Positions 1,011 through 39,464 of a DNA stretch of 45,088 bases are shown here, piece after piece. The notes beneath the pieces were generated by a model, which was not told the origin of the DNA, did not search any database, and saw only the letters and a list, made by a program, of their open reading frames with translations. The position numbers and the translations under genes were made by a program. Where the stretch lies: NCBI RefSeq assembly GCF_001194135.2, contig NC_068982.1, positions 103,284,520 to 103,329,607 on the forward strand, read 5' to 3'. The stretch's first letter is position 1, and each line of letters starts with the position of its first letter. The stretch comes from Octopus bimaculoides. Its lineage: Eukaryota.

Positions 1011-2520
1011 TCAATGTTGAAGCACCCCAGGGCAAACAATAATCATGGTGTAATTTTGTGTCGGTGTCGAAATGAATACATTGTTGCTGCTTCCAACTTG
1101 CAAGCAAGCCACATAGAGCTGGCTGTGGGACAAGCATGTAGTAGAGAGATCAAGTCCAACAATCTTGAGGGATTGACCCTGAGATTTGTTAACTGAAATA
1201 CCAAAACTTAGTTTGACTGGAAACTGAAGCATCTTAAATTCAAATGGAATATTAGTAGGTTTGAGATGAATTTTTGGAATAAAGACATTTTCTCCTTTGT
1301 GACTACCTATTATGATTGTTGCTTGTAGGACATGGTGCTTCATGGAAGTAACAATTAAGTGACTTCCATTACACAGGTGAGATGGGTCAAGATTCCGAAA
1401 TAACATAATGGAAGCACCTAGTTTTAGTGCCAAGTTATGTGGTGGCATTCCAGTAGGTTTAAGTGTGTTCAGAGATTCAACAAGGTATTGAACAACCTGA
1501 TCTTGATCAACTGTTGTCAATTGATCAAAAAGCCATTTCTGATGTATCTGTTAACTTTTGAAGAAGTTCATGATTGAGTTTATCAACCATTTCATTAGTT
1601 GGAGCCAGTATAGCTCTTTCACACAGCCAGTTTACATCAGTATAATTGACAGATAAATTAGAAAATACTTTATCCATAAGATCCCTAAGAGAAAGTATCA
1701 TATGATTGCATGTAATTTCATGTAGTTGAAGTCTTGAGTTGAATGTTAATATCCCATTACCAATCTTAAGAAGCTCGTATGATCACCTTGTAGAAGTACT
1801 CTCATGTTGCTTGTAAGATGAAGTTTTTTCAAATGTCTGCAATGGTACGATTTTTGTAAGCATGCATTGACCTCATCAGCATTTGACCCTTTGGGAATAA
1901 CTGGCAACTCTTGATGAAAATCTCCTGCAAGAAGAACTGTTACTTCTCCCATGAGCATGCTATTGTTTTTTTTATGTCTTGGAGGGTACAGTCAAGTACC
2001 TCTAGAGCTCCATGATGTGACATAGTGCACTCATCCCAAACAATGAGGCAAGTTTGTTGGAGAACTGTTGCCATTGCAGAGTTTTGGGAAATGTTGCACA
2101 TCTGAGATTCTTTATTGCAAGGTTCAGAGGGAGCTTGAGCATGGAATGAGCAGTTTTCTCCCACTGAGGAGGGTAGCTGCAATACCAGAAGATGCAACAC
2201 TGGAAGAAGGACTGCAGGTGAAAGTAGCAAAAAGATCTGATTTTCCGTACGTCTCGATATATGTTATAGCATCTTGTATTCATTTGTACATATAACAAGG
2301 ACCATCTGTGAATGTAATGGGAGGATTAAAAGTTGCCCCATGTTTTGAATATCACTATCTGTCCTCAGAGCATCTAGGAAATGAACATAATTTTTAGCCC
2401 CTAACTTTTTGGATTGTTTCAAATGTAGAGGAGATGCTTACTCTCAACTTTAGCATACATATCAACCAGATATTGCCGAAATAGATCACGATACATGTGT
2501 AATTGATTTGATTGTTCTGG
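1011..2520 (-). mobile_element. Helitron Rep/PIF1-helicase remnant (frameshifts, stops, large internal deletion)
   Basis: Minus-strand translations: LFRQYLVDMYAKVES, then QDAITYIETYGKSDLFATFTCSP (Rep N-terminal region and motif 1), then VASSGIAATLL..TAHS, IVWDECTM, LLAGDFHQELPVI, RAILAPTN, MPPHNLALKLGASIMLFRNL, FPVKLSFGISVNKSQGQSL, HSQLYVA (PIF1 helicase motifs). Confidence 0.95.
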
Positions 2521-6204: not shown

Positions 6205-6825
6205 GCTAGAGATAGCTTCCGTTATCTAGGTGACCAAGCCATTAGTGGAAGTGGATCCTCTGAGAGCATAGCTGTGAGAATAAGAATAGGCTGGGAAAAG
6301 TTCAGAGAGCCCCTACCATTGCTGGCAACAAAAGGCCTCTCTCTCAGGGTGAAAGGCAGATTGTATGATGCCTGTGTGCAAACAGCTATGCTACATGACA
6401 GTGAAACATGGGCTATGACAGCCAAGGACAGCTGTGTAAAGAAGTGCCGATCTCTAACTGTGGAGGGAACTTATGGTAGAGGTAGACCCAGGAAGACATG
6501 GGACAAGGTGGTGAAGCATGATCTTCGAACTTTGGGCCTCACAGAGGCAATGACTAGTGACCGAGACCTTTGGTGATATTCTGTGCTTGAGAAGATTTGA
6601 CAAGCCAGGTGAAGTAGAAACCTTTGACATTATATTGTGCTTGAGAAGAAGACCTATCAAGCCAAGTAAAATCATAGTTGTAGCAACTACTGATGTCACG
6701 CAAATGGCACCCATGCTGGTGGCACACAAAAGCACCCATTACACTCTCAGAGTGGTTGCTGTTGGGAAGGGCATCCAGCATAGAAACCATGCCAAATCAG
6801 CCTGGAGTCTGGTGCAGCCTTCCAG
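6205..6825 (+). mobile_element. RTE-clade LINE 3' fragment (ORF C-terminus plus 3' UTR)
   Basis: DSFRYLGD..RIRIGWEKFREPLPLLATKGLSLRVKGRLYDACVQTAMLHDSETW...GRGRPRKTWDKVVKHDL; 3' UTR AAGGGCATCCAGCATAGAAACCATGCCAAA shared with 23440-23480. Confidence 0.92.
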
Positions 6826-6905
6826 CACTTGCTCAATGTGCCATGCAGCAGGAATGAACCCAGACAAATGTGGTTGGGAAATAAGCTTCTTACCACACAG
6901 TCACA
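6826..6905 (-). mobile_element. SINE family A head fragment
   Basis: CACTTGCTCAATGTGCCATGCAG...GTGGTTGGGAAATAAGCTTCTTACCACACAG. Confidence 0.75.
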
Positions 6906-7365: not shown

Positions 7366-7592
7366 TTCACCTAGGTATTTACTTTATTGGCAATCAAGAT
7401 GTCATACTAAACTTGATTCTCAAAATAATTTACTTTATTCATTATATAAGGAGAGCATAAATGACCAAATTAATAGCGTACGAACAACCAACCAAAAAGT
7501 TAGTAATTTGTATCTTGTCGCAGCCATTGCCATGACACTTAGCATTTAACAGCAGAGTTCGTTTATCTCATAGTAAATACAGCAAAGTAATA

Positions 7593-8670
7593 TATTGGGT
7601 CACCCCATAAATAATGCAGTTTTCTTATACTTCCTTTTATTTTTCAAAATTAAGATAAACAAAGTTATTTTTAAATCTAAAATATACTCTCCTTCATTTT
7701 CTACAATGTTCTTCCATCTATCTGGTAGACTTGCAAGGCCCCTCTTCCAAAATTCATTTGTCGGTGATGAAAAATACTCCTCCAGTACTGTTCTGACCTT
7801 GTCTACAGAATTCATATTTTTTCTGTCCAAATGATTCTGAAGACTGCAGAATAAATGATAATCAAATGGGGCAATGTCTGGCAAATATGGTGGGTGGGGT
7901 ATCATTTCCCATTTAAACTGCTCCAGCCTTTGGAATGTCATCCTTGCTGTATGTAGTCAAGCATTATCCTGATGGAAGAACACCTTTCATCTTGAAAGCA
8001 AATATGGTCGTTTTTCTTCTAGCGCTGACTTAGGCCATTCAAGCTGCTTGCAGTAGATCTCCTTTGTTATCATTTGGTTTGGGTTTAAAAGTTCAAAGTG
8101 GACTTAACCTTTCATATCCCATCAAACAAATAACAACACCTTATGTGCTTGAATACCTTCTTTAGCTTGGGGTGCCTGTGTTTCTCCTTTTCCCTACCCA
8201 CTGTCTTTGGCACTTGACATTTTTATAGAGAACTCATTTCTTGTCACCAGTCTCTATTCAGCCCAAGAAAGGTTCATTCGTGAGACGTGACAGCAAAGAA
8301 GAGCATACATTCACTCACTGTGTGCGATTAGACTTGGAAAGCTTGTGACTTTCTGATGACACACAGGTGTTGATGAAAGGGTGAATAATCAAATCCAAGC
8401 TTCTCTGCTAGTTCCTCAACAGTTACAATGGGATTTTGTTCCACCAGGGTTTACAGGACATCCTTGTTGAGTGCTACAGATCTTCCAGGACAAGGCTCAT
8501 CTTCTAGGCTGTAGTTTCCAGCTCGGAATTTCTGGAACCATTGTTGACACTGGTTTACACTTATTGTCCAGTCCCCATATACTGCATATATTCCTTGCAC
8601 TTTCTGTTGTTGCTTTATTGATCTCATAACGCAAAATATGCCAAATATGCTCCTTAATGATAACTAAATT
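7593..8670 (-). mobile_element. mariner (D,D34D) transposon remnant
   Basis: Minus strand: WFQKFRAGNYSLEDEP..GR, IETGDKK*VLYKN, FHQDNA, HPPYLPDIAPFDYHLFCSLQNHL, LPDRWKNIVENEGEYILD. TA plus TIR-like TATTGGGTCACCCCATAAATAATGC at 7591-7617. Opposite TIR not found. Confidence 0.93.
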
Positions 8671-11300: not shown

Positions 11301-11714
11301 TATTAAGAAACTGTCCTTTACAAATCAGACATGATCTTGCAGTACAAGCCCATCCATCTCACACCAGTGTACAAGAGGTGAGAACATTAAAATGAGTGAT
11401 GATAATAATAATTTTATAAGTAGTCAGATGCTCACAACTTGTTTTCAATTATTTCAGAAAAAATATGAGTGTCATAACTTCTTCTTTCAATTCCAATATG
11501 AAATAAGAAAAAAAATTTTTTTGCTCTAATTGTAGATTGAGAAATTGATTTCATAATAACATTTCTAAAATATTACGGAGATGTACTTGCATAGCAAGTG
11601 ATTTGATCTGCGGTCGTGTGCTGAAACAAAAACAATCGCAGTGTGGAAGGTGTTTATAAGCCATTTAAAAACACACAAAAAACCGTTAGATTCACTTCAA
11701 CATTTTTTTTACCT

Positions 11715-11930
11715 TTTACTCGATTTAGTCATAGGACTGTGGTCATGCTGGGGCATCATCCTGAAGGTTTTAGGCAAACAAACTGACCCCAGTACTTATT
11801 TCTAAAGTCAGTAACTAATTCTTTCGGTCTCTCTTTTGCCAAATTGCTAAGTTACAAGGATGTAAACAAACCAGCACAGGTTGTCAAGCGATGGGAGAGG
11901 AACAAACATAAACACTGACACACACACAAA
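11715..11930 (-). mobile_element. SINE family A, 3' half (left flank of the U6 insertion)
   Basis: Collinear with 3361-3570: GGTCATGCTGGGGC...GACCCCAGTACTTATT...GGTTGTCAAGCGATG...ACAAAC, ending in (CA)n. Confidence 0.85.
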
Positions 11931-11932
11931 TT

Positions 11933-11944
11933 GCGGTACATATT

Positions 11945-11977
<33 letters not shown>

Positions 11978-12026
11978 GGCCCCTGCGCAAGGATGACACG
12001 CAAATTCGTGAAGCGTTCCATATTTT
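11933..12026 (+). pseudogene. U6: U6 snRNA copy, 5'-truncated retropseudogene
   Basis: 11938-12026 matches vertebrate U6 nt 18-106 as I recall it at 88/89 (ACAGAGA box 11961-11967, AGC triad, ISL, terminal TATTTT). Only the 3' arm of the 5' stem-loop (GCGGTAC) is present. Upstream sequence is SINE body, with no PSE/TATA. Confidence 0.95.
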
Positions 12027-12079
12027 CAAATCACGGTGGTGCACCAGCATGACCGCAGCCACTTGGCTGAAACACATAA

Positions 12080-12087
<8 letters not shown>
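12027..12087 (+). mobile_element. LINE/SINE-type 3' tail fused to U6
   Basis: GGTGGTGCACCAGCATGACCGCAGCCACTTGGCTGAAACACATAAATAAA aligns with the family-A SINE 3' end GGTGGGGCTCTAGCATGGCTGCAGTCAAATGACTGAAACAAGTAAAAGAA; followed by (TA)n. Confidence 0.8.
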
Positions 12088-12118
<31 letters not shown>

Positions 12119-12346
12119 TGAGAAAGTTGGTATGTGAAAGCACGTGGTTGGATGTATAAAAGATAATAAGAGTGAAAAAACTACAGAAGGCTTGTGTTAC
12201 TTGGTTAAAGTATATATCTAAATTATGTCAGAAAAATGTTAGAAAAATGTTAGAAAAAAGTTATAAAATCTTTTTGGTATATAAACATTGTATATATATA
12301 TTACCCCGTCTCCATGTTTTGTCGTAAGGTCGCATTAGGTTCACCA

Positions 12347-12500
12347 CGGGCTTCCACACAGTTTCCATTCATCAAATTCACTAACAAGGCATTGGTCAGC
12401 CTGGGGCTATAATAGAAGACACTTGCCTAAGGTACTGCAATGAAACTGAACTCGAAACCAAGTGGTTGCAAAGCGAGCTTCTTTACCACACAGCCATGGG
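12347..12500 (-). mobile_element. SINE family A, 5' half (right of the U6 insertion)
   Basis: ACGGGCTTCC...GCTATAATAGAAGACACTTGCCTAAGG...GTGGTTGCAAAGCGAGCTTCTTTACCACACAGCCA; tRNA-like head on the minus strand. Confidence 0.85.
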
Positions 12501-13120
12501 CACTTCTTACATATGCATGATTCGCACTTACTTTGATACCCTCATTATTACATAGCATAATGAATGACTCTGAATTCAATCCAAACCAAATCATTTTGTG
12601 TTTTAAATTTATTTGGTTATTGTTCTTTAGCCCTGAATTAAGCATTGCAGACCTATAATCAAAGATATTCTAGCGGTGACCACCCTTATAAATCTAAGCC
12701 GACATTGTCCAATGTGTTTCCTTTTTCGGATGTGATTTGAGGGAGATTTGGCTGCTATTTCTAACAGATCGAAAGTATAACAGCTCTTTCGTTGGCTCAT
12801 ACCTGTAAGGTATTTCAAGATGGATATCAACAGGAATAAAATCTGAATAAAAAATACAAAAGAAGTTAATAATCCAATAAATACCGAATACTTTTATAAT
12901 AATTCTTTTTAAAAATATAGAAATATTTGAAACACCATAAAAACTGACAAATTCGTATTGGTGTGGGACGTTAGCCGACTAATAACTAAAAATTCATAGC
13001 GTGTTGAAATGACAGTATTAAAGATATTGATATTTTTTTCAACTATCTGTCTCACCTGTTAATACGGTTTTGGAAAAAGATATTTTCATTTTCCTTTTAT
13101 ATATATATATATATATATAT

Positions 13121-38924: not shown

Positions 38925-38927
38925 CTT

Positions 38928-39278
38928 TTATTTCAATTATTAGCCTGCAGCCATGCTGGGGCACAGCCTTAAACTTTTAGTCAAATGAATCAACCTCAGT
39001 ATTTATTTTTTAAACCTGGTACTTATTCTACCAGTCTCTTTTACAGGTACTCAAACACACCAAAATTGGTTGTCAAGTGGTGGTGGTGGGACAAACATGC
39101 ATAGATATATATATACATGACAGGCTCCTTTCAGTTTCTGTCTTACCAAATCCACTCACAGCGCTTTGGTTGCATGAGACTATAGTAGAAGATACTTGTT
39201 CAAGGTGCCACATAGTGGGACTGAACCTAAAACCATGCGGTTGGGAAGCAAGCTTCTTACCTCACAACCATGCCTGCA
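38928..39278 (-). mobile_element. SINE family A, full length
   Basis: Minus strand head GGTTGTGAGGTAAGAAGCTTGCTTCCCAACCGCATGG..GGTTCAGTCCCAC, core GGCACCTTGAACAAGT, microsatellite linker, tail CCCCAGCATGGCTGCAGGCTAAT. Confidence 0.9.
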
Positions 39279-39464
39279 CCTTGACTTTCCATGATTTTTT
39301 GAGTTTTAATCCAAAATGGAGACGTATACCAATGTTCCATGTGATAGAGTTGATAATTGTTGAGGGACTTCTCTTAACATGAAACCAATGGTAGCCTTAA
39401 TACACAAATAAAAAATCTTTATCCACTCATTGTTTAATATTTATGTGTATATGTATAAATATAT

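What the first reader, a model, noticed from the sequence alone, without database searches (positions are those of the whole stretch)
11933..12087. U6 snRNA fused to a non-L1 LINE/SINE 3' tail: candidate U6 chimeric retrogene or U6-headed SINE-like family
Seen: a near-perfect U6 (88/89 nt versus vertebrate nt 18-106) lacking the 5' arm of its cap stem-loop ends in TATTTT and continues after a 7-nt linker into GGTGGTGCACCAGCATGACCGCAGCCACTTGGCTGAAACACATAAATAAA, homologous to the 3' end of the local family-A SINEs, then (TA)n. Established: mammalian U6/L1 chimeras have this architecture, with U6 joined at its U-tract to a retrotransposon 3' end by template switching or RNA ligation; crocodilian SINEU elements use U1/U2 heads; non-L1 LINEs recognise their own 3' tails. 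Inference: a tail-dependent LINE has retrotransposed a U6-tail chimera in a cephalopod-like genome. I know of no description of this in molluscs but cannot confirm novelty. U6 has an external Pol III promoter, so a multi-copy family would need another source of transcription.
Basis: partly seen in the sequence, partly recalled or inferred. Interest (0 to 1): 0.85.

Follow-up and report, generated by a model that had tools for sequence, protein, structure and literature searches.

The report
U6 pseudogene fused to retroposon tail
A 5'-shortened copy of the U6 spliceosomal RNA is joined at its U-tract to the structured 3' tail of an octopus SINE/LINE family and sits inside an older SINE; it is most likely a one-off by-product of LINE reverse transcription, a kind already catalogued in platypus, lizard and opossum, so it is real but ordinary apart from the host phylum.

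Summary
Window 11933-12026 (+) is U6 nt ~13-106 (Rfam 101.8 bits). It has 1 mismatch to a genuine invertebrate U6 gene and 3 to an Octopus sinensis U6 gene. It lacks the 5' arm and loop of the cap stem and any upstream promoter. After four Ts and 8 nt (not 7) comes a ~50-nt tail (12035-12084) homologous to the 3' end of the local tRNA-SINE family. The tail folds into two hairpins that covary across 11 octopus tails.

New context: the unit lies antisense inside an older SINE (11699-12500, 6-bp TSD), exactly at the (CA)n|(TA)n boundary of its central microsatellite. The trailing (TA)n is therefore probably host sequence.

Best reading (about 0.72): a dead chimeric retropseudogene made when a tail-specific LINE started on a SINE/LINE tail and then continued on U6 RNA, by template switch or prior RNA ligation.

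This architecture is published for L2/Mon-1 (platypus), L2/RTE/AnolisSINE2 (lizard) and RTE (opossum) (Doucet 2015). It is therefore a new member of a known kind, possibly the first noted in a mollusc.

A multi-copy U6-headed family could not be tested, because no cephalopod genome was searchable. TSDs are uninformative.

The parts
11693..11698 (.). Left copy of the host SINE's putative 6-bp target-site duplication (CACTTC on +, GAAGTG on -)
   Evidence: The same hexamer abuts the other end of the host SINE at 12501-12506. It is short, so only moderately significant.
11699..11932 (-). 3' half of the older host tRNA-derived SINE: tail, body and the (TG)n part of its central microsatellite, seen as (CA)n on +
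   Evidence: Comparator SINE positions 188-354 map to 11909-11724. The region is 71% identical to the O. sinensis copy L003:10880-11250 up to 11928. The tail core is at 11737-11757.
11933..12026 (+). U6 snRNA-derived segment, nt ~13-106, ending in ATATTTT; the 5' arm and loop of the cap stem are missing and there is no upstream TATA/PSE
   Evidence: Rfam RF00026 at 101.8 bits. Alignments to genuine U6 genes show 93/94 identity to L001 and 91/94 to O. sinensis L003. The upstream sequence is host SINE.
12027..12034 (+). 8-nt junction CAAATCAC; either the 5'-most part of the donor tail or untemplated nucleotides
   Evidence: It matches the standard SINE at this position at 4/8. It matches CAAATGAC of the tail-only fragment L003:5190 at 7/8 only if a 3-nt indel is allowed. 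The origin is ambiguous.
12035..12084 (+). SINE/LINE-type 3' tail with hairpin 1 at 12034-12055 and hairpin 2 (CAGCC-ACTT-GGCTG) at 12056-12069, followed by GAAACACATAAATAAA
   Evidence: BLAST to SINE tails. Fold of -20.6 kcal/mol, z = -4.7. Across 11 tails, 85% of cells are paired against 17-41% in slid controls, and 4 pairs show compensatory change.
12085..12116 (.). (TA)n; most likely the (TA)n part of the host SINE's central microsatellite, possibly extended at insertion
   Evidence: TRF reports 12076-12116. Sense SINE copies carry (TA)n(TG)n at their centre (L003 copy; window 39100-39120).
12117..12346 (.). Unassigned 230-bp block that also interrupts the host SINE; probably a separate insertion or rearrangement
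   Evidence: It has no other match in the window. 12167-12210 is 95% identical to O. bimaculoides L002:20152-20194. An 11-bp tandem repeat lies at 12225-12268.
12347..12500 (-). 5' tRNA-related head of the same host SINE
   Evidence: Comparator SINE positions 14-166 map to 12498-12346 at 72% identity. Putative TSD copy at 12501-12506.

Best explanation
This is a single, dead-on-arrival chimeric retropseudogene.

Inferred mechanism: a LINE that recognises a specific structured 3' tail (a 'stringent' LINE) nicked TA-rich DNA in the central microsatellite of an old SINE. It began target-primed reverse transcription on the 3' tail of a SINE or LINE RNA. After ~50-58 nt it continued on U6 snRNA from its 3' U-tract. 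That continuation came either from a template switch or because U6 had already been ligated to a fragment of the tail RNA.

cDNA synthesis, or 5' end-joining, stopped within the very stable 5' stem-loop of U6. This left a copy that starts at nt ~13.

The product has no promoter, no cap stem and no function. The tail is the module that gave it access to the reverse transcriptase.

Shown: the U6 identity and its limits, the direct same-strand junction at the U-tract, the tail homology and conserved two-hairpin structure, the nesting inside an older SINE, and the absence of a promoter and 5' stem.

Inferred: the RNA-level origin, the enzyme involved and the order of events.
For: U6 identity and 5' truncation.

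The copy has T4 where the genuine genes have T5-T6 terminators. This fits an RNA-derived rather than DNA-derived copy.

Upstream of the U6 segment is host SINE, with no TATA at -30, unlike the genuine genes L001 and L003.

The tail is homologous to SINE 3' ends. It keeps both hairpins intact (z = -4.7), and both hairpins still form in the context of the whole chimera.

The hairpins covary across 11 octopus tails: 85% of cells paired, 4 compensatory pairs, 1/500 shuffles. The CAGCC...GGCTG stem variant also occurs in an O. vulgaris transcript.

Nesting: the two halves of one SINE, with breakpoints at comparator positions 166/188 and a 6-bp TSD, flank the unit. The host half is only ~71% identical to a younger copy, whereas the U6 part is 97-99% identical to genes. 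The insertion is therefore much younger than its host.

Chance adjacency is unlikely. There are 11 tails and 1 other tail-only fragment in 126.8 kb of octopus DNA. The chance that a tail starts within 10 nt after a given U6 end on the same strand is about 4e-5 to 4e-4.

The same anatomy is documented for stringent LINEs: 5'-truncated U6, a short LINE/SINE tail, a simple-repeat end and tiny or no TSD (PMC4476161 section 10).
Against: No convincing TSD brackets the unit. Only AAAT-type repeats occur, in low-complexity DNA.

The partner LINE that carries this tail was not found in the 127 kb available.

A further 230 bp of unexplained sequence (12117-12346) interrupts the host SINE beside the unit, so the locus history is more complex than one clean insertion.

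The scaffold has N gaps and microsatellites nearby, and no reads were available to verify the join.

A tail-only fragment exists elsewhere (L003:5190), so heavily 5'-truncated tail insertions do occur independently.
Confidence: 0.72

Rival explanations
1. Two independent events adjacent by chance. A U6 retropseudogene came first, and later a heavily 5'-truncated SINE/LINE tail fragment landed 0-8 nt after its U-tract on the same strand (or the reverse order).
For: Tail-only fragments do exist in octopus DNA and lie in TA-rich sequence (L003:5190-5245). No TSD ties U6 and tail together. The host microsatellite has evidently taken more than one insertion (block 12117-12346).
Against: The estimated chance of such adjacency and orientation is 4e-5 to 4e-4 (from the counts). 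A lone U6 copy without poly(A) or a tail has no known route of retroposition by tail-specific LINEs (PMC4476161). No TSD for a tail-only insertion is present either. Both parts look young and intact.
Confidence: 0.1
2. It is a member of an amplifying U6-headed SINE-like family. One founder chimera was transcribed from a flanking promoter or master locus and then copied many times by the tail-specific LINE.
For: The tail is structurally intact and would be recognisable by the LINE. SINEU shows that snRNA-headed SINEs without internal promoters can amplify (PMC4494074). A fixed start at U6 nt ~13 could be a family-specific 5' end.
Against: Only one copy occurs in the 45 kb window and none in 82 kb of O. 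bimaculoides and O. sinensis DNA; the only other U6 there is a genuine gene. U6 has an external promoter and the 5' end is missing here. ORF-based searches for the junction found nothing, although they did recover mammalian U6/L1 chimeras. All of these negatives are weak, because the searchable collections hold almost no cephalopod DNA (controls).
Confidence: 0.07
3. It is an assembly artefact. The scaffold joins a U6-containing read path to a SINE tail, or mis-joins at the flanking microsatellites.
For: The window is a gapped short-read style scaffold, with N runs at about 13.9-14.7, 18.1-18.9 and 22.3-22.8 kb flanked by (TA)n. The unit is bracketed by (CA)n and (TA)n. Both U6 and the SINE are multi-copy.
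Against: The U6-to-tail junction (12020-12040) is complex, non-repetitive sequence. The 8-nt linker belongs to neither the genuine U6 flanks nor the standard SINE, so it must come from real reads. The chimera's tail is a distinct variant and not the abundant consensus. The architecture matches a known biological product.
Confidence: 0.05
4. It is a functional or variant U6 gene, or a U6 gene fragment created by a U6-targeting Dada DNA transposon.
For: The U6 body is very well conserved. Dada-U6 transposons occur in molluscs (PMC8869645).
Against: There is no 5' stem-loop and no TATA/PSE, and the upstream sequence is SINE. The Dada-U6 target CTTGCGCAG, which is CTGCGCAAG on the U6 strand, is uninterrupted in the copy.
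Confidence: 0.01

Closest known systems
U6-L2 and U6-Mon-1 chimeras of platypus; U6-L2, U6-RTE and U6-AnolisSINE2 chimeras of Anolis; U6-RTE/RTESINE1 of opossum (Doucet et al. 2015, PMC4476161)
   Same: U6 is fused at its 3' end to a short 3' piece of a tail-specific (stringent) LINE or of its partner SINE. U6 is usually 5'-truncated. There is no poly(A). The element ends in a simple repeat. TSDs are very short or undetectable. The explanation given is template switching during LINE reverse transcription.
   Different: The host is a cephalopod mollusc rather than a vertebrate. The partner LINE and its clade are unidentified here. This is a single example rather than a genome-wide set. It is nested in the microsatellite of another SINE.
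U6/L1 chimeric retrogenes of placental mammals (Buzdin 2002; Garcia-Perez 2007; Moldovan 2019, PMC6789731)
   Same: U6 is joined at its U-tract to the 3' end of a retrotransposon RNA in the same orientation. The copy lacks a promoter. Possible routes are template switching or RtcB ligation to the 2',3'-cyclic phosphate of U6.
   Different: L1 chimeras carry full-length U6, end in poly(A) and have 7-20 bp TSDs. L1 is a 'relaxed' LINE. Here the 3' module is a structured, non-poly(A) tail and U6 lacks its first ~12 nt.
SINEU (U1/U2-headed SINEs of crocodilians; Kojima 2015, PMC4494074)
   Same: An snRNA-derived 5' part is joined to a retroposon 3' part, and there is no internal Pol III promoter.
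   Different: SINEU are demonstrated multi-copy families with subfamilies and master copies, and they use U1/U2. Here there is one copy, from U6, with no evidence of amplification.
Octopus tRNA-derived SINE family with central (TA)n(TG)n and tail ...GGTGCTCCAGCATGGCCGCAGTCAAATGACTGAAACAAGTAAAAGA (copies in the window and in O. bimaculoides and O. sinensis loci)
   Same: It shares the terminal ~50 nt, with the two-hairpin structure, at 75-83% identity.
   Different: The chimera has no tRNA-related head or SINE body. Its tail is a variant (CAGCC/GGCTG stem, ...CATAAATAAA end) and not the common consensus.

Membership tests
U6 spliceosomal RNA (RF00026), as sequence | Covariance-model score above Rfam's gathering threshold | tested here: met
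   101.8 bits against a threshold of 44.
Functional U6 gene | Complete 5' stem-loop (cap stem) | tested here: not met
   The 5' arm and loop are absent and Rfam marks the stem pairs as non-standard. The genuine genes L001 and L003 have the stem.
Functional U6 gene | External promoter (TATA at about -30, PSE) and T5-6 terminator | tested here: not met
   The upstream sequence is host SINE with no TATA at -30, and there are only four Ts. The genuine genes have TATA and T5-T6.
U6/LINE (or SINE) chimeric retropseudogene | U6 joined at its 3' U-tract, on the same strand, to the 3'-terminal segment of a LINE/SINE | tested here: met
   Junction at 12026/12027, and tail homology from 12035 to the element's end.
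U6/LINE (or SINE) chimeric retropseudogene | Target-site duplication bracketing the whole chimera | tested here: inconclusive
   Only AAAT-type 4-mers occur, in low-complexity flanks. Published stringent-LINE chimeras have TSDs of 1-9 bp or none.
U6/LINE (or SINE) chimeric retropseudogene | Both parts arrived in one event (empty orthologous site, or equal age) | not testable with these tools
   No cephalopod genome was searchable. Indirect support only: both parts are near-intact while the host SINE is ~29% diverged from a younger copy.
U6/LINE (or SINE) chimeric retropseudogene | An autonomous LINE in the genome shares the tail | not testable with these tools
   No LINE with this tail was found in the window or in loci L002-L005. 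Collection scans found no cephalopod DNA.
Stringent-type LINE/SINE 3' tail | Conserved stem-loop(s) near the 3' end followed by short repeats | tested here: met
   Two hairpins: 85% of cells paired against 17-41% in slid controls, and 4 pairs with compensatory changes across 11 tails. SINE ends carry (GTAAAAGA)n-like repeats. Caveat: the structure was derived from one of the aligned sequences.
U6-headed SINE family (SINEU-like) | Many copies with the same junction in different flanks | not testable with these tools
   One copy in 45 kb and none in 82 kb of other octopus DNA. DNA scans were uninformative because the controls also failed.
U6-headed SINE family (SINEU-like) | A source of transcription (internal promoter or a master copy with a 5' extension) | tested here: not met
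   There is no U6 promoter and the 5' end is truncated; the unit is embedded antisense in a SINE.
Dada-U6 transposon-associated U6 fragment | Interruption of U6 at the target CTTGCGCAG | tested here: not met
   CTGCGCAAG is intact at 11984-11992. The target is as given in PMC8869645.

The most novel reading that the evidence does not exclude
The locus is one copy of a U6-headed, tail-mobilised retroposon family in octopods: a U6 counterpart of crocodilian SINEU. It would start at U6 nt ~13 and be propagated from a master copy transcribed by a flanking promoter. That would make it the first U6-derived SINE-like family and the first snRNA-headed one in an invertebrate.
Probability: 0.06. Interest if true: 0.65.

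Novelty: new member of a known kind. Interest (0 to 1): 0.28.

Why it matters
If the reading is right, the preference of LINE reverse transcription for U6 snRNA as a second template extends beyond vertebrates to a protostome. That includes tail-specific (stringent) LINEs and their SINE partners. It supports the view of Doucet et al. that this is a general property of non-LTR retrotransposition, or of U6's cyclic-phosphate 3' end.

It also gives a small, datable marker of recent LINE activity in an octopus genome.

It has no functional consequence at this locus, which is a dead copy inside repeat DNA.

The held literature contained no description of U6 chimeras in molluscs or other invertebrates. 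That library is incomplete, so 'first in molluscs' is unconfirmed.

Tried and rejected
1. Exact look-up of the two mechanical ORFs that span the junction (11881-12117 + and 11847-12143 -) in public assemblies returned nothing on record.

2. Protein-space searches with the translated U6+tail found 716 and then 78 U6-overlapping ORFs, none with this tail. The method does recover mammalian U6/L1 chimeras (P0122, P0124). However, cephalopod DNA was evidently not ORF-called in that collection, so the negative is weak.

3. DNA pattern scans for any U6-end-to-tail junction in metagenome, viral and prokaryote-genome collections gave 0 hits. Control scans for the abundant SINE tail alone also gave 0. 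These collections hold no cephalopod DNA, so the negatives say nothing.

4. TSD search around the unit found only chance-level low-complexity repeats. A 9/10 match, ATAAACAYTG at 11908 and 12281, is at about the chance expectation of ~0.5.

5. Rfam at a permissive threshold over 11650-12550 found no known LINE 3' element such as UnaL2.

6. Dada-U6 transposon involvement was rejected because the target site inside U6 is intact.

7. The idea that the 8-nt linker is templated by the donor tail is suggestive only. There is a 7/8 match to L003:5190 but the register is ambiguous.

8. The supplements of the octopus LINE paper were searched for the tail and for U6 junctions. A tail variant with the same CAGCC/GGCTG stem was found, but no U6 junction and no LINE carrying the tail.

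9. The RTE-like fragment at 6274-6576 has a different 3' region and is not the partner.

Full report
**1. What is in the sequence**

Rfam's U6 model matches window 11922-12027 (+) at 101.8 bits (threshold 44). It is the only Rfam family found in the 45 kb window, and the pairs of the 5' stem are flagged as non-standard.

To obtain proper references I fetched two genuine U6 genes.
- L001:1511-1617 comes from an ENA contig. It has a TATA box upstream, scores 116.3 bits, and has a U5 gene nearby.
- L003:7535-7640 (-) comes from Octopus sinensis. It has a TATA box, a T6 terminator, a 5' stem GTATTGC-TTCG-GCAATAC, and scores 116.7 bits.

Against these, the window copy is homologous from 11933 (GCGGTAC...) to 12026 (...CCATATTTT). 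That is 94 nt, corresponding to U6 nt ~13-106. It has one mismatch to L001 and three to the O. sinensis gene, two of them in the 3' arm of the 5' stem.

The 5' arm and the UUCG loop are missing. There are four Ts where the genes have five or six. What lies upstream is not a promoter but part of a SINE.

Then comes GGTGGTGCACCAGCATGACCGCAGCCACTTGGCTGAAACACATAAATAAA (12035-12084), followed by (TA)n to 12116.

**2. The tail is a real SINE/LINE-type 3' module**

- Within the window the tail matches the 3' ends of three SINE copies. The best is 75% over 52 nt, E 1.5e-6. The 21-nt core is found 4 times, against 0 in 100 shuffles.
- The PIF1-like ORF at 1011-1520 has its closest named relatives in O. 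sinensis and O. bimaculoides. I therefore fetched four 20-kb stretches of those genomes through their annotated proteins.
- The same SINE family is there, with seven more tails. The chimera's tail is 82.6% identical over 46 nt to a young O. sinensis copy.
- The tail folds into two hairpins at -20.6 kcal/mol, z = -4.7. Both still form when the whole U6+tail RNA is folded.
- Across 11 tails, 85% of cells in this structure are standard pairs, against 17-41% when partners are slid. Four pairs show changes on both sides, and only 1 of 500 shuffles reaches the observed covariation. One caveat applies: the structure was derived from one member of the alignment.
- The chimera's CAGCC...GGCTG version of hairpin 2 (the common SINE has CAGTC...GACTG) also occurs in an O. 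vulgaris transcript sequence. It is therefore a lineage variant and not random decay.
- A structured tail followed by short repeats is the hallmark of 'stringent' LINE/SINE pairs. That statement rests on established knowledge (Kajikawa and Okada 2002, as cited in PMC4476161).

**3.

The unit sits inside an older SINE of the same family on the opposite strand.
- Using the intact copy at 38925-39285 as a ruler, positions 14-166 map to 12498-12346 and positions 188-354 map to 11909-11724.
- About 410 bp therefore replace the ~20-bp centre of the element.
- A 6-bp direct repeat (CACTTC) abuts both outer ends, at 11693-11698 and 12501-12506. This supports one original insertion.
- In sense orientation the family has (TA)n(TG)n at its centre. 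On the + strand of the window this reads (CA)n then (TA)n, and the U6 unit lies exactly between them. The (TA)n after the tail is thus most simply host sequence.
- The host half is ~71% identical to a young copy, while the U6 part is 97-99% identical to genes. The U6 unit is therefore a much later arrival.
- Next to it, 12117-12346 is a further unassigned block. It contains a 44-nt piece that is 95% identical to an O. bimaculoides repeat, and an 11-bp tandem repeat.

**4. How it most likely arose**

The anatomy is that of a retroposed chimera primed on the tail:
- an RNA-type U6 copy with T4 and no promoter;
- a direct same-strand fusion at the U-tract;
- the terminal ~50-58 nt of a structured retroposon tail;
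- 5' truncation;
- insertion into TA-rich DNA.

Either the reverse transcriptase switched template from the tail RNA to U6, or U6 had already been ligated to a tail fragment. These are the two routes documented for U6/L1 (PMC4476161; PMC6789731), and they cannot be told apart here. The stop at nt ~13 lies inside a very stable UUCG-capped stem, which is a plausible place for cDNA synthesis or end-joining to end (inference).

Chance juxtaposition is unlikely. With 11 tails and one other tail-only fragment in 126.8 kb, the chance that a tail starts within 10 nt after a given U6 end on the same strand is roughly 4e-5 to 4e-4.

**5. Weak points**

- No informative TSD brackets the unit.
- The partner LINE was not found.
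- The locus has taken more than one hit.
- The scaffold is gapped and I could not check reads.
- The origin of the 8-nt linker is ambiguous.

**6. Copy number**

- The DNA collections available contain no cephalopod sequence. Scans for the junction gave nothing, but so did control scans for the abundant SINE tail.
- Two mechanical ORFs span the junction. Exact look-ups found nothing.
- Homology searches returned hundreds of U6-overlapping ORFs, including mammalian U6/L1 chimeras, but none with this tail.
- In the 82 kb of octopus DNA fetched, the only U6 is a genuine gene.
- A U6-headed family is therefore neither supported nor excluded. I rate it unlikely because the copy lacks a promoter and its 5' end.

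**7. Comparison with what is known**

The closer precedent is Doucet et al. 2015 (PMC4476161, section 10).
- In platypus, 40 U6 chimeras with L2 or its SINE Mon-1 were found. Nearly all have a 5'-truncated U6 upstream of a short L2 piece, with TSDs of 1-9 bp.
- In Anolis there are chimeras with L1, L2, RTE and AnolisSINE2.
- In opossum there are 5'-truncated U6 copies with RTE and RTESINE1.
- In turkey there is one with CR1.
- The authors conclude that template switching to U6 is general to non-LTR retrotransposons.

The present locus matches that description feature for feature.

Searches of the held literature found no report of such chimeras in molluscs or other invertebrates. Active octopus LINEs reported so far are of the RTE clade (PMC9115989). 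Dada-U6 transposons, which occur in molluscs, are excluded because their target inside U6 is intact.

**8. Verdict**

This is a new member of a known kind, of modest interest (0.28).

Noticed in passing
window 11699-12500 (-), flanks 11693-11698 and 12501-12506: An old tRNA-derived SINE whose central (TA)n(TG)n microsatellite has accumulated ~410 bp of foreign DNA in at least two pieces. A 6-bp direct repeat, CACTTC, flanks the whole element. SINE-internal microsatellites may be insertion hot spots.
   Followed up: partly
window 12117-12346: An unassigned 230-bp block beside the U6 unit. 12167-12210 is 95% identical to O. bimaculoides L002:20152-20194, which lies next to an assembly gap. 12225-12268 is an 11-bp tandem repeat (ATGTTAGAAAA x4). 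The repeat family was not identified.
   Followed up: partly
window about 13.9-14.7 kb, 18.1-18.9 kb, 22.3-22.8 kb: Runs of N (assembly gaps), each flanked by (TA)n/(CA)n microsatellites. The window comes from a gapped scaffold, which a database entry gives as 72.29 Mb long. The O. bimaculoides locus L002 shows the same style of gaps.
   Followed up: no
window 11950-12030 (+): A 27-aa 'protein' (P0136, KIGTIQRRLAWPLRKDDTQIREAFHIF) is on record as encoded here. It is simply U6 translated, so it is a spurious gene call. Hundreds of similar U6-derived 'proteins' exist in the protein collection (716 hits).
   Followed up: partly
window 1011-1520 (-): An ORF with a Pif1 2B domain (Pfam 6.5e-16), Helitron/PIF1-helicase-like. 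Its closest named relatives are in Octopus sinensis and O. bimaculoides (64-71% identity), which places the window in an octopod.
   Followed up: partly
window 6274-6900 (+) and 7600-7941 (-): An ORF ending ...GRGRPRKTWDKVVKHDL resembles, from memory, the C-terminus of an RTE-type LINE ORF. It is followed by a second, different SINE/LINE-tail-like repeat. The other ORF has a mariner-transposase-like motif (HPPYLPDIAPFDYHLF). Neither reached a Pfam hit.
   Followed up: no
L003 7130-7640 (O. sinensis): A genuine U6 gene (7535-7640, minus strand) has a SINE of the same family inserted tail-to-tail only ~24 nt beyond its terminator. This shows that U6 genes and these SINEs can also be neighbours at the DNA level, here in the opposite relative orientation to the chimera.
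   Followed up: partly
L003 5186-5250 (O. sinensis): A tail-only fragment (~60 nt) of the SINE/LINE tail is embedded in TA-rich microsatellite DNA. It has a variant second hairpin and an ...AAATAAAT end like the chimera's. It may be a 5'-truncated copy of the unidentified partner LINE.
   Followed up: partly
L001 833-952 (-) and 1511-1617 (+) (ENA ERZ25072740 contig): A U5 and a U6 snRNA gene lie ~560 bp apart on a eukaryotic contig in a metagenome assembly. This U6 has the GCGGTAC 3' arm seen in the window copy. The organism is unknown.
   Followed up: no
proteins P0122, P0124: ORFs from ENA assemblies read through U6 directly into mammalian L1 ORF2-like sequence. These are U6/L1 chimeras captured as 'proteins', and they served as a positive control for the ORF-based search trick.
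   Followed up: no
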